Of a stretch of DNA of 64,000 nt, positions 61,155 to 62,853 are shown piece after piece (position 1 is the first letter of the stretch; each line of letters starts with the position of its first letter). Made by a program: the position numbers and the translations under genes. Origin of the DNA: Okamejei kenojei (taxonomy: Eukaryota); the NCBI GenBank assembly GCA_035221665.1, contig JAVHYY010000154.1, forward strand, positions 248,001 through 312,000. Reading direction: 5' to 3'. The notes under the pieces are model-generated. The model had not been told where the DNA came from and made no database searches. It saw only the letters and a list, made by a program, of their open reading frames with translations.

Positions 61155-62853
61155 AAGGCCCTGTTGTGACTAGCAGAAAGAAAACACGTCCGACATCTTG
61201 TAAGTAAGGTTTAATCTCCACAACCGACGGAAACTTCTCCAAGGTCACCTGACCTCAATCACGGCGGCACAGGCATTTATATTAAAGGGGCACTGGCATT
61301 TATATTACATATACATCAGAGTGATGAACAATGGAATGCACGAATAGAAATATAAAGGGACGAATTGCTGACAGGCATCTGGATGGGTGGATGGGTGGAT
61401 AGAATGGACGGGTTAATAGACACCGAAGATGGGGTGAAGGGTATACAGTGAGCCAATGACATGGAGAACAACAGATGGATAGCAACATGGGCAGACGATG
61501 GTCTGGCTGTGTAGATAGATGGACAGACAGGCGGATATATCGCTTGAAATACTCCGACAGAGAGGNNNNNNNNNNNNNNNNNNNNNNNNNNNNNNNNNNN
61601 NNNNNNNNNNNNNNNNNNNNNNNNNNNNNNNNNNNNNNNNNNNNNNNNNNNNNNNNNNNNNNNNNNNNNNNNNNNNNNNNNNNNNNNNNNNNNNNNNAAA
61701 TAAATAAGCAGGCAAATAAATAGACAAACAACGCAAGAGGAAGGAAGGAAAGGACGAAGGAAAGAGTAAGGAAGCAAAGAAGGAAGGACGGAAGGAAGGA
61801 AGGAAGGAACGAACGAACGAACGAAGAAAGAGAGGAAGACACAAAAATGTAAAATAAATAGGGGAGGAAAGAGGGATATCGAAGGGATAGGAGAGAAAGA
61901 ACGAGAGAGAGAGGGGGCGGGGNNNNNNNNNNNNNNNNNNNNNNNNNNNNNNNNNNNNNNNNNNNNNNNNNNNNNNNNNNNNNNNNNNNNNNNNNNNNNN
62001 NNNNNNNNNNNNNNNNNNNNNNNNNNNNNNNNNNNNNNNNNNNNNNNNNNNNNNNNNNNNNNNNNNNNNNNNNNNNNNNNNNNNNNNNNNNNNNNNNNNN
62101 NNNNNNNNNNNNNNNNNNACTATTTTTTTTCCATTTTTACAGATGTATCAAAAGTGAATTTAATCTCTCTCACGTTGATGGTGTTGAGGATCCTCCTGTT
62201 CAATGTCCTGTTGACGGCCTGCGTCTGGATGATTTAAGGTGAGGCTGGTTCACTCAAATTGGCACATGGAAAGACATCGTGTGGCCGCTGGTCATGTCCG
62301 GAATAAACGGTGCAAGCAATATTTCTCGATTGTCCATGTCGTAACCCCCCGCTGATCGTCCGGCTCCAGCCACATTGTGAAGTTAATGCTGAATTATTTA
62401 GGTTTTTGAACGTTTGCGGAAGGATAGTTACTCGTCACCCTCAGTACACATGCTACTGTTATATATTCTGCTGTTATATAATGATTAATTAACATCGTCT
62501 GGCCATTTTGCACCTCCACCACATACAATTTACATATCGTTCTCAAACGTGTCTATATGTAGAACTTATAGAAACATAGAAACATAGAACATAGGTGCAG
62601 GAGTAGGCCATTCGGCCCTTCGAGCCTGCACCGGCATTCAATATGATCATGGCTGATCTTCCATCTCAGTATCCTGTACCTGCCTTCTCTCCATACCCCC
62701 TGATCCATTTAGCCACAAGGGCCACATCTAACTCCCTCTTAAATATAGCCAATGAATTGGTGACCTTGGAGAAGTTTCCGTCGGTTGTGGAGATTAAACC
62801 TTACTTACAAGATGTCGGACGTGTTTTCTTTCTGCTAGTCACAACAGGGCCTT
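61155..62853. repeat. 95-bp inverted repeat pair (61155-61249 / 62759-62853)
   Basis: Direct reverse-complement match; the same peptide appears in ORFs 61039-61248 (-) and 62643-62891 (+). Confidence 0.92.
62143..62237 (+). CDS. TCR alpha/delta-type transmembrane exon, DVSKVNLISLTLMVLRILLFNVLLTACVWMI*
   Basis: TTTTACAG acceptor, phase 1; KVN..SLT...LR..FN.LLT signature. TAA is followed by a G|GTGAGG donor, implying a separate 3' UTR exon as in TCR alpha/delta. Confidence 0.9.

What the first reader, a model, noticed from the sequence alone, without database searches (positions are those of the whole stretch)
62143..62237. TM helix lacks the conserved CD3-binding lysine through a clean 5-residue deletion
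Seen: LRILL-FNVLLTACVWMI*. Established: TCR alpha/delta TMs read R-x4-K-x4-N (human alpha [20 protein letters not shown]; delta LRMLFAKTVAVNFLLTAK). In alpha the Arg engages CD3 zeta-zeta and the Lys engages a CD3 epsilon heterodimer. Here R-to-N spacing is 5 rather than 10 and the Lys is gone. The juxtamembrane basic residue is Cys, which extends the hydrophobic run to ~25 residues with no tail. Inference: either a receptor with altered CD3 stoichiometry or a different adaptor (zeta/FcR-gamma only), or a recent crippling deletion, plausibly between TTC-AA microhomologies.
Basis: partly seen in the sequence, partly recalled or inferred. Interest (0 to 1): 0.8.

Follow-up and report, generated by a model that had tools for sequence, protein, structure and literature searches.

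The report
Skate TCR-delta membrane exon missing lysine
The membrane-anchor exon of this skate's T-cell-receptor delta gene lacks the five codons holding the lysine that docks a CD3 signalling pair, but indirect evidence suggests a young deletion confined to this lineage, and probably disabling, not a new receptor design.

Summary
Window 62143-62238 (+) is the transmembrane exon of a TCR-delta constant gene. The gene has a C1-set exon (57517-57825), a connecting-peptide exon with the interchain Cys (61016-61069) and this exon. It reads (D)VSKVNLISLTLMVLRILLFNVLLTACVWMI*.

HMMER, MAFFT and tblastn each place a clean 5-residue gap after LRILL. The comparison set is human TCR-delta and every elasmobranch alpha/delta chain retrieved. 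All of these read GLR-x-LF-x-K-x3-FNV-x2-TAR. The invariant Gly (now Val) and the membrane-proximal Arg (now Cys) are also changed.

Whether this is typical of the species could not be read directly. Contigs from three other samples cover the exon: one with the same species label but about 2% divergent, and two related species. By arithmetic, each carries 15-16 extra letters somewhere in about 62150-62337. Exactly 15 nt are missing from the exon.

In the C exon the window lineage has 6 nonsynonymous and 1 synonymous derived changes. One is Val to Glu next to the B-strand Cys.

My best reading is a real, young, lineage-restricted deletion that probably prevents normal CD3 assembly. A functional Lys-less delta chain is not excluded. 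No RNA data could be found. The scan noted this same stretch once more from an overlapping window, not on other DNA.

The parts
49235..49540 (+). V segment of IgH-like (TAILV/VH-delta) type, same orientation as J and C
   Evidence: tblastn to the S. canicula VH-like-V + C-delta chain P0004, E 6e-20. WYRQFPGKSLEW and YYCA motifs present.
49541..49579 (+). 23-spacer recombination signal of that V (CACAGTA-23-GTAAAACCC)
53417..53444 (+). 12-spacer recombination signal of the J (nonamer AGTTTTTGT, 12 nt, heptamer CACTGTG)
   Evidence: 7/7 heptamer and 8/9 nonamer when read on the - strand
53445..53510 (+). J-delta segment (..KLVFGSGSALYVKP), donor G|GTAAGT, phase 1
57517..57825 (+). C-delta exon 1, a C1-set Ig domain, phase 1/1
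   Evidence: Pfam PF07654 E 1.2e-4. The best matches among 1.84 billion representatives are shark TCR-delta chains at 42-46% identity, E 2e-16 to 8e-16. Splice sites were read.
61016..61069 (+). Predicted connecting-peptide exon (G)WGRCTRKSIGWQMDDVT(D) with the interchain Cys, phase 1/1
   Evidence: It is the only candidate with a strong acceptor (16/20 pyrimidines + AG), a G|GTAAAT donor, the right phase and a Cys. It ends MDDVT|D, like shark MDMET|D. The two differences shown in other samples are both synonymous. There is no RNA confirmation.
61923..62118 (.). Run of N ending 24 nt upstream of the TM exon (left unfilled)
62143..62238 (+). C-delta exon 3: end of connecting peptide, transmembrane helix and stop (TAA 62235-62237); donor at 62239
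62196..62201 (+). Site of the 5-codon gap (between Leu18 CTG and Phe19 TTC, +/- 1-2 codons). Asn20 now sits at R+5, where relatives have Lys.

Best explanation
This is exon 3 (transmembrane) of the TCR-delta constant gene of a skate. The gene sits as a V / J / C block in inverted orientation beside the J-alpha array. In this assembly the exon has lost 15 bp, and with them the invariant Lys that lies five residues after the Arg. In TCR-delta that Lys forms salt bridges with the two Asp of the CD3 delta-epsilon dimer, and the Arg binds zeta-zeta. A chain with only the Arg should therefore fail the ordered CD3 assembly and be poorly expressed or not expressed at the surface (inferred, not shown). 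The deletion appears to be derived and young. It seems restricted to the window's lineage or haplotype, and it is accompanied by other radical changes: Gly to Val before the Arg, the membrane-proximal Arg to Cys, and Val to Glu and Tyr to Asn in the C domain. That pattern fits a delta constant gene under relaxed constraint, either a null or hypomorphic allele or an early pseudogene.
For: The identity as C-delta rests, with genomic context. The Lys, Gly and membrane-proximal Arg are invariant in all elasmobranch alpha/delta chains retrieved and in human delta. The role of delta Lys258 (CD3 delta-epsilon) and Arg253 (zeta-zeta), and the heavy reliance of the gamma-delta TCR on these charges, is stated in PMC11485255. 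PMC13107469 states that even Lys/Arg exchange compromises assembly. Evidence that the deletion is derived comes, table 8. The contigs over the exon have inserted letters = (gap letters + net length difference)/2, which gives 15 for X5, 15 for X8 and 16 for X9. For X5, the from_end value at 62338 places the net gain left of 62338. X8's alignment starts at 62135, so the insertion lies right of about 62150. Exactly 15 nt are missing from the exon inside that interval. In the C exon, 7 of 8 window-versus-X5 differences are derived on the window side, 6 of them nonsynonymous. The flanks show 2 of 7 (Fisher p = 0.04). X1, from a near-identical conspecific, shares the C-exon changes at 57607, 57612 and 57772, so those are not assembly errors.
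Against: The position of the extra 15 letters was not displayed (22 indel rows were hidden). It could lie in the intron, in which case the Lys-less exon would be shared by at least three lineages. The reading frame, both splice sites, the interchain Cys, the J signal and the V signal are all intact. The Arg-to-Cys change lengthens the hydrophobic run to the C-terminus (25 residues), which could be compensation for the deletion. The state of the exon in X1 is unknown. There are no RNA data and no batoid C-delta protein for comparison.
Confidence: 0.5

Rival explanations
1. This is a functional, species-typical (or skate-wide) Lys-less TCR-delta chain. It would assemble through the Arg with zeta-zeta (or an FcR-gamma-like dimer) and through the partner gamma chain's Lys, giving a complex with one CD3 dimer fewer. 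The Asn now at R+5 and the Arg-to-Cys change would keep a membrane-spanning helix of normal length.
For: The frame and splice sites are intact, and so are the Cys-bearing connecting-peptide exon and the V and J signals. The hydrophobic run is kept at 25 residues by the Arg-to-Cys change. The rest of the exon is well conserved; FNVLLTA-VW is identical to a shark delta chain. Receptors with a single Arg near the top of the helix do assemble with zeta or FcR-gamma dimers (PMC13107469). Val to Glu at the residue before the B-strand Cys could be a pairing-specificity change, not damage (inference).
Against: The Lys is invariant in every alpha/delta chain seen. Assembly studies find each basic residue indispensable. 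The 15 extra letters in three other samples suggest that relatives keep the Lys codons. Derived changes in the C exon run 6 nonsynonymous to 1 synonymous, at neutral-like speed. No transcript or annotated protein of this gene was found in a 5.8-billion-protein collection, although a skate TCR-alpha transcript is there.
Confidence: 0.2
2. The deletion is an assembly artefact. The exon lies only 24 nt from a run of N (a contig end), and the 15 bp were dropped by the assembler or polisher.
For: The N run ends at 62118. All three other samples appear to have 15 more letters here. Another agent's note on this genome mentions one-base insertions that may be mis-assembly (unchecked).
Against: A clean in-frame 15-nt loss is not a typical polishing error. 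The surrounding 374 nt differ from X5 by only 3 substitutions. The window's other odd letters in the C exon are reproduced by an independent assembly of X1.
Confidence: 0.12
3. This is a second, diverged paralogue of C-delta. The canonical Lys-bearing gene would lie elsewhere in the genome, and the contigs of the other samples would come from it.
For: The C exon is only 42-46% identical to shark C-delta. X1 has a minor contig carrying the other samples' letters at 57684-57738.
Against: X5 shows only one sequence type at these positions (other depth equals all depth), and the similarity extends through the introns at about 98%. That is the behaviour of alleles or orthologues, not of old paralogues. 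No second C-delta or TM exon exists in the window or in the scan's notes for this genome. The locus context is the expected one for the single TRD.
Confidence: 0.08

Closest known systems
Canonical TCR-delta constant region (human TRDC in PDB 9ci8/9cia/9jy2; shark TCR-delta chains XP_067833084 Heptranchias, XP_038644089 Scyliorhinus, XP_078058183 Mustelus NAR-TCR)
   Same: It has a C1-set domain with the FxPKxI motif and a connecting peptide with one Cys. The TM exon starts (D/E)xKVN..SLT..LR, contains FNVLLTA-VW and ends 4 residues later. The stop lies in the second-to-last exon. The gene follows a J with a 12-spacer signal and IgH-like V segments.
   Different: Five residues are missing, including the Lys at R+5. 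The Gly before Leu-Arg is Val, and the membrane-proximal Arg is Cys. Glu replaces Val before the B-strand Cys.
Single-arginine activating receptors that pair with zeta-zeta or FcR-gamma dimers (CD89, NKp46/NKp30, CD16A; PMC13107469)
   Same: One Arg lies in the upper part of an otherwise hydrophobic helix, there is no signalling tail, and no second basic residue is present.
   Different: Those are germline-encoded, non-rearranging receptors. Here the helix belongs to a rearranging, disulfide-paired TCR chain whose partner chain still needs a CD3 dimer. No association was tested.
Natural or engineered loss of TRDC (squamate reptiles lacking TCR gamma and delta genes, PMC11754216; TRDC-knockout pigs, PMC8298467)
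   Same: It would be a lineage-specific disabling of the delta constant gene, if the deletion is crippling.
   Different: In squamates the genes are deleted outright. Here the gene is structurally complete, and the lesion is a 15-bp in-frame deletion plus point changes that may be polymorphic.

Membership tests
TCR-delta constant gene (TRDC) | C1-set Ig domain closest to TCR-delta constant domains | tested here: met
   PF07654 hit. The best hits in an exhaustive HMMER search are shark delta chains, including NAR-TCR and VH-like-V chains. In the tree it groups with delta-type chains, apart from the skate alpha-type clade (weak resolution).
TCR-delta constant gene (TRDC) | Lies downstream of its own J (12-spacer signal) and V (23-spacer signal), within the TCR alpha/delta locus | tested here: met
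   J at 53445-53510 with CACAGTG-12-ACAAAAACT, and V at 49235-49579 with a 23-spacer signal. The J-alpha array lies on the other strand at 1304-9883. D segments were not found and may lie in N runs.
TCR-delta constant gene (TRDC) | Connecting peptide with the interchain cysteine | tested here: inconclusive
   The predicted exon 61016-61069 encodes WGRCTRK..MDDVT, with good splice sites and phase. No RNA confirms it, and sample X5 has AG to TG at its acceptor (61014).
TCR-delta constant gene (TRDC) | TM helix with Arg and, five residues on, Lys (docking of zeta-zeta and of CD3 delta-epsilon) | tested here: not met
   The Arg is present and the Lys is absent through a 5-residue gap. The role of the residues is described in PMC11485255.
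TCR-delta constant gene (TRDC) | Transcribed and spliced V(D)J-C in lymphoid tissue | not testable with these tools
   No RNA run holds the stretch.
Single-Arg zeta/FcR-gamma-coupled receptors | One basic residue (Arg) in the outer half of the TM helix and none elsewhere | tested here: met
   The Arg is residue 10 of the 25-residue hydrophobic run, with no other basic residue.
Single-Arg zeta/FcR-gamma-coupled receptors | Physical association with a zeta or FcR-gamma dimer and dependence on it for surface expression | not testable with these tools
   This needs co-expression experiments.

The most novel reading that the evidence does not exclude
The Lys-less exon is the normal, expressed TCR-delta of this skate (or of skates generally). 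It would be a gamma-delta receptor that has given up the CD3 dimer normally docked on the delta chain, keeping only zeta-zeta on delta and one CD3 dimer on gamma. Asn would take the Lys position, and the Arg-to-Cys change would restore helix length. This would be the first natural TCR with reduced CD3 stoichiometry.
Probability: 0.17. Interest if true: 0.85.

Novelty: new variant of a known kind. Interest (0 to 1): 0.45.

Why it matters
The two basic residues of the alpha/delta helix are among the most conserved features of jawed-vertebrate antigen receptors, and each is regarded as indispensable for CD3 assembly. A naturally occurring delta chain without the Lys can be read in two ways. It may be a natural knock-out or hypomorph of the gamma-delta lineage in a cartilaginous fish. 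That would be useful for asking what gamma-delta and NAR-TCR cells do in this group, and for comparison with squamates, which lost them. Less likely, it is a natural experiment in reduced CD3 stoichiometry. Either way, the reference TRDC annotation of this species should not be taken as the canonical sequence.

Tried and rejected
1. I searched for a second, Lys-bearing TM exon, prompted by the scan's note of a relic TM exon in skate TCR-beta. tblastn with eight relatives finds only 62139-62234. The 196-nt N run just upstream could not be examined and was left unfilled.

2. A connecting-peptide candidate at about 60780-60900 ('RPVACPVP') was rejected because no acceptor has the right phase.

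3. The Leucoraja protein that NCBI names 'T cell receptor delta constant' (P0011) is not the delta orthologue. It starts with the last J-alpha-type J, which matches window 4452-4529, and it groups with the alpha-type chain P0009.

4. P0021, an old UniParc entry, was considered as a possible clearnose-skate delta chain. Its V and J are 58-75% like a sawshark chain, and its C region is only 43% like the window's, so I treat it as a shark sequence.

5. Three word-index protein searches and one exhaustive HMMER search found no batoid C-delta protein or transcript. Each exon was searched separately, and the joined spliced model was deliberately not searched.

6. A full-text search for the TM peptide strings found nothing. 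Reviews gave nothing on skate delta TM residues, and Pettinello 2017 is not held.

7. The ESM Atlas and the look-up of encoding contigs were closed, so orthologous DNA from other skates could not be fetched.

8. No RNA run holds the locus, so I chose four DNA runs for the single read-laying run.

Full report
**What is in the sequence**

At 62141-62142 a strong acceptor (ttttccatttttacAG) opens an exon. From 62145 it reads VSKVNLISLTLMVLRILLFNVLLTACVWMI and stops at TAA 62235-62237. One more base and a GTGAGG donor follow. The first two bases (AT) complete a split codon. With the G that ends each of the two upstream exons, that codon is GAT (Asp). A run of N (61923-62118) ends 24 nt upstream of the exon. 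I left it unfilled.

**Which gene it belongs to**

- **Constant-domain exon.** A C1-set exon lies 4.3 kb upstream at 57517-57825, phase 1/1. An exhaustive HMMER search of 1.84 billion representatives returned shark TCR-delta chains as its best matches. These were Heptranchias at 46%, Pristiophorus at 42%, a Scyliorhinus chain with an IgH-like V at 43%, and a Mustelus NAR-TCR chain at 39%. Alpha-type chains were more distant, at 30-34%, and form their own clade in a tree.
- **Connecting-peptide exon.** The only convincing candidate between the two exons is 61016-61069. It encodes (G)WGRCTRKSIGWQMDDVT(D). It has 16 of 20 pyrimidines before the AG, a G|GTAAAT donor, the right phase, one Cys, and an ending like shark MDMET|D.
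- **J and V segments.** Upstream lie a J (53445-53510) with a near-perfect 12-spacer signal and an IgH-like V (49235-49540) with a 23-spacer signal.
- **Locus layout.** On the other strand are a second IgH-like V (33700-34029) and a J-alpha-type array at 9836-9883, 8360-8410, 4452-4529 and 1304-1351. The gene is therefore the TCR-delta constant gene of the alpha/delta locus, with its V-J-C block inverted relative to J-alpha.
- **Organism.** Earlier notes of this scan call the genome a skate. A J here is 81% identical to the J that starts a Leucoraja erinacea protein, which fits a skate but not that species.

Each exon was searched separately.

**The gap**

phmmer against the PDB gives human TCR-delta constant as the only kind of hit: EKVNMMSLTVLGLRMLFAKT against SKVNLISLTLMVLRILLFNV. 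In a delta/alpha chimera it opens a 5-residue gap after RILL. MAFFT (A1) and tblastn place the same gap.

Every elasmobranch alpha/delta chain I retrieved reads G-L-R-x-L-F-x-K-x-x-x-F-N-V-x-x-T-A-R-x-W. The window reads V-L-R-I-L-L-[gap]-F-N-V-L-L-T-A-C-V-W. Three invariant features are therefore changed:
- the Lys, lost together with four neighbouring residues;
- the Gly before Leu-Arg, now Val;
- the membrane-proximal Arg, now Cys.

After the gap, Asn sits at R+5, the place of the Lys. The hydrophobic run after the VN motif is 25 residues and reaches the C-terminus, against 30 residues (with the Lys and Arg inside) in relatives. No second TM exon exists in the readable part of the window.

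**Why the Lys matters (established knowledge)**

In the human gamma-delta TCR-CD3 structure, delta Lys258 forms salt bridges with Asp111 of CD3-delta and Asp137 of CD3-epsilon. Arg253 binds the two Asp36 of zeta-zeta. The gamma-delta receptor 'relies heavily' on these strictly conserved charges because its ectodomains barely touch CD3 (PMC11485255). A 2026 review states that each basic residue has a specific partner in an ordered assembly, and that even Lys/Arg exchanges compromise it (PMC13107469). A delta chain with only the Arg is therefore predicted not to recruit that CD3 dimer. This step is inference.

**Whether it is typical of the species**

No RNA run holds the locus. I laid the contigs of four DNA runs on 57300-62600:
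- **X1:** same species label, about 0.3% different from the window.
- **X5:** same label, another study, about 2% different.
- **X8:** organism B, about 4% different.
- **X9:** organism C, about 6.6% different.

Contigs of X5, X8 and X9 span the exon, but the tool hid 22 of 34 indel rows and showed none inside the exon. So I used arithmetic on table 8, taking inserted letters as (gap letters + net length difference)/2.

| Run | Reference span | Record letters | Gap letters | Inserted letters |
|---|---|---|---|---|
| X5 | 374 | 385 | 19 | 15 |
| X8 | 461 | 453 | 38 | 15 |
| X9 | 443 | 451 | 24 | 16 |

- X9's 8 deleted letters are fully explained by the listed deletion at 62537.
- For X5, the from_end value of 160 at 62338 equals 62497-62338+1. 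There is therefore no net indel to the right of 62338, and the net gain lies in 62124-62337.
- X8's alignment starts at 62135. A 15-nt gap can only be opened after some tens of matched bases, which puts it right of about 62150.
- All three other samples thus appear to carry about 15 letters that the window lacks within about 62150-62337. The exon (to 62238) is missing exactly 15 relative to all homologues.

I take this as good but indirect evidence, about 0.7, that the relatives retain the Lys codons. Other decompositions of the gap counts are possible, and the insertion could sit in the intron.

**Signs of relaxed constraint in the window lineage**

All 15 X5-versus-window differences in 57300-57976 are listed.
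- Of the 8 in the C exon, 7 are derived on the window side, because X5 agrees with X8 and/or X9. Six of those 7 are nonsynonymous: V30E, L32V, T56A, Y66N, S74T and G85A.
- In the flanks only 2 of 7 are window-derived (Fisher p = 0.04).
- The exon and flank rates are alike, at 2.6% and 1.9%.
- Val30 precedes the B-strand Cys and is Val in all nine relatives. Tyr66 is Tyr in most.
- X1 shares the window letters at 57607, 57612 and 57772, so these are real and not assembly errors.
- Around 57654-57768, X1 also has a low-depth contig with the other samples' letters. It looks like a heterozygous bubble, which suggests that the variants segregate.
- X5 has its own oddity: AG to TG at the acceptor of the connecting-peptide exon (61014).

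**Verdict**

The most likely account (0.5) is a real, young, lineage- or haplotype-restricted 15-bp deletion that removes the CD3-docking Lys. It sits in a constant gene that shows other radical changes. That fits a null or hypomorphic allele or an incipient pseudogene.

Three alternatives remain:
- **Functional Lys-less delta chain with altered CD3 use (0.2).** The gene's intact frame, splice sites, Cys and recombination signals support it, as does the apparent length compensation by the Arg-to-Cys change.
- **Assembly artefact next to the contig end (0.12).**
- **Diverged paralogue (0.08).**

The remaining probability is unassigned.

**Limits**

The single read-laying run did not display the critical indel. 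No batoid C-delta protein or transcript exists in the protein collections searched. The N runs were not filled.

Noticed in passing
window 61016-61069 (+): Predicted connecting-peptide exon of C-delta with the interchain Cys. In sample X5 the acceptor AG reads TG (61014 A>T). The two in-exon differences shown (61017, 61047) are synonymous.
   Followed up: partly
window 1304-1351, 4452-4529, 8360-8410, 9836-9883 (- strand): There are four J segments of J-alpha type, 1.5-4 kb apart. The one at 4452-4529 is 81% identical to the J that starts the Leucoraja protein NCBI calls 'T cell receptor delta constant', which is in fact an alpha-type constant. C-alpha must lie beyond the window start, so the delta V-J-C block is inverted relative to J-alpha/C-alpha.
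   Followed up: partly
window 33700-34029 (-) and 49235-49579 (+): Two IgH-like (TAILV/VH-delta-type) V segments lie in opposite orientations. Both are best matched by the V of a catshark VH-like-V + C-delta chain (E 9e-22 and 6e-20). Only the + strand one was checked for a recombination signal.
   Followed up: partly
window 57654-57768: Run X1 (near-identical conspecific) has a depth-2 contig carrying the X5/X8/X9 letters at 57684, 57714, 57725 and 57738, beside the window-like contig. It looks like a heterozygous bubble, so the C exon seems polymorphic, with three amino-acid differences in 55 nt.
   Followed up: no
window 57606-57608 (codon 30 of the C exon): This codon is Glu (GAG) where three other samples have Val (GTG) and all nine relatives have Val. 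The position precedes the B-strand Cys and in antibody constant domains faces the partner chain. A compensating basic residue in TCR-gamma would be worth a look.
   Followed up: no
window 58000-60660 and 62553-63270: LINE reverse-transcriptase fragments (..LEYCVQFW..RRFTRLIPGM..) fill intron 1 of C-delta and the region after exon 3. They attract hundreds of thousands of contig pieces in every skate run laid.
   Followed up: no
window 50604-51696, 61566-61697, 61923-62118: These N runs sit between V and J (where D segments would be expected) and in intron 2 of C-delta, all beside simple repeats. No D segment was found in the readable sequence.
   Followed up: no
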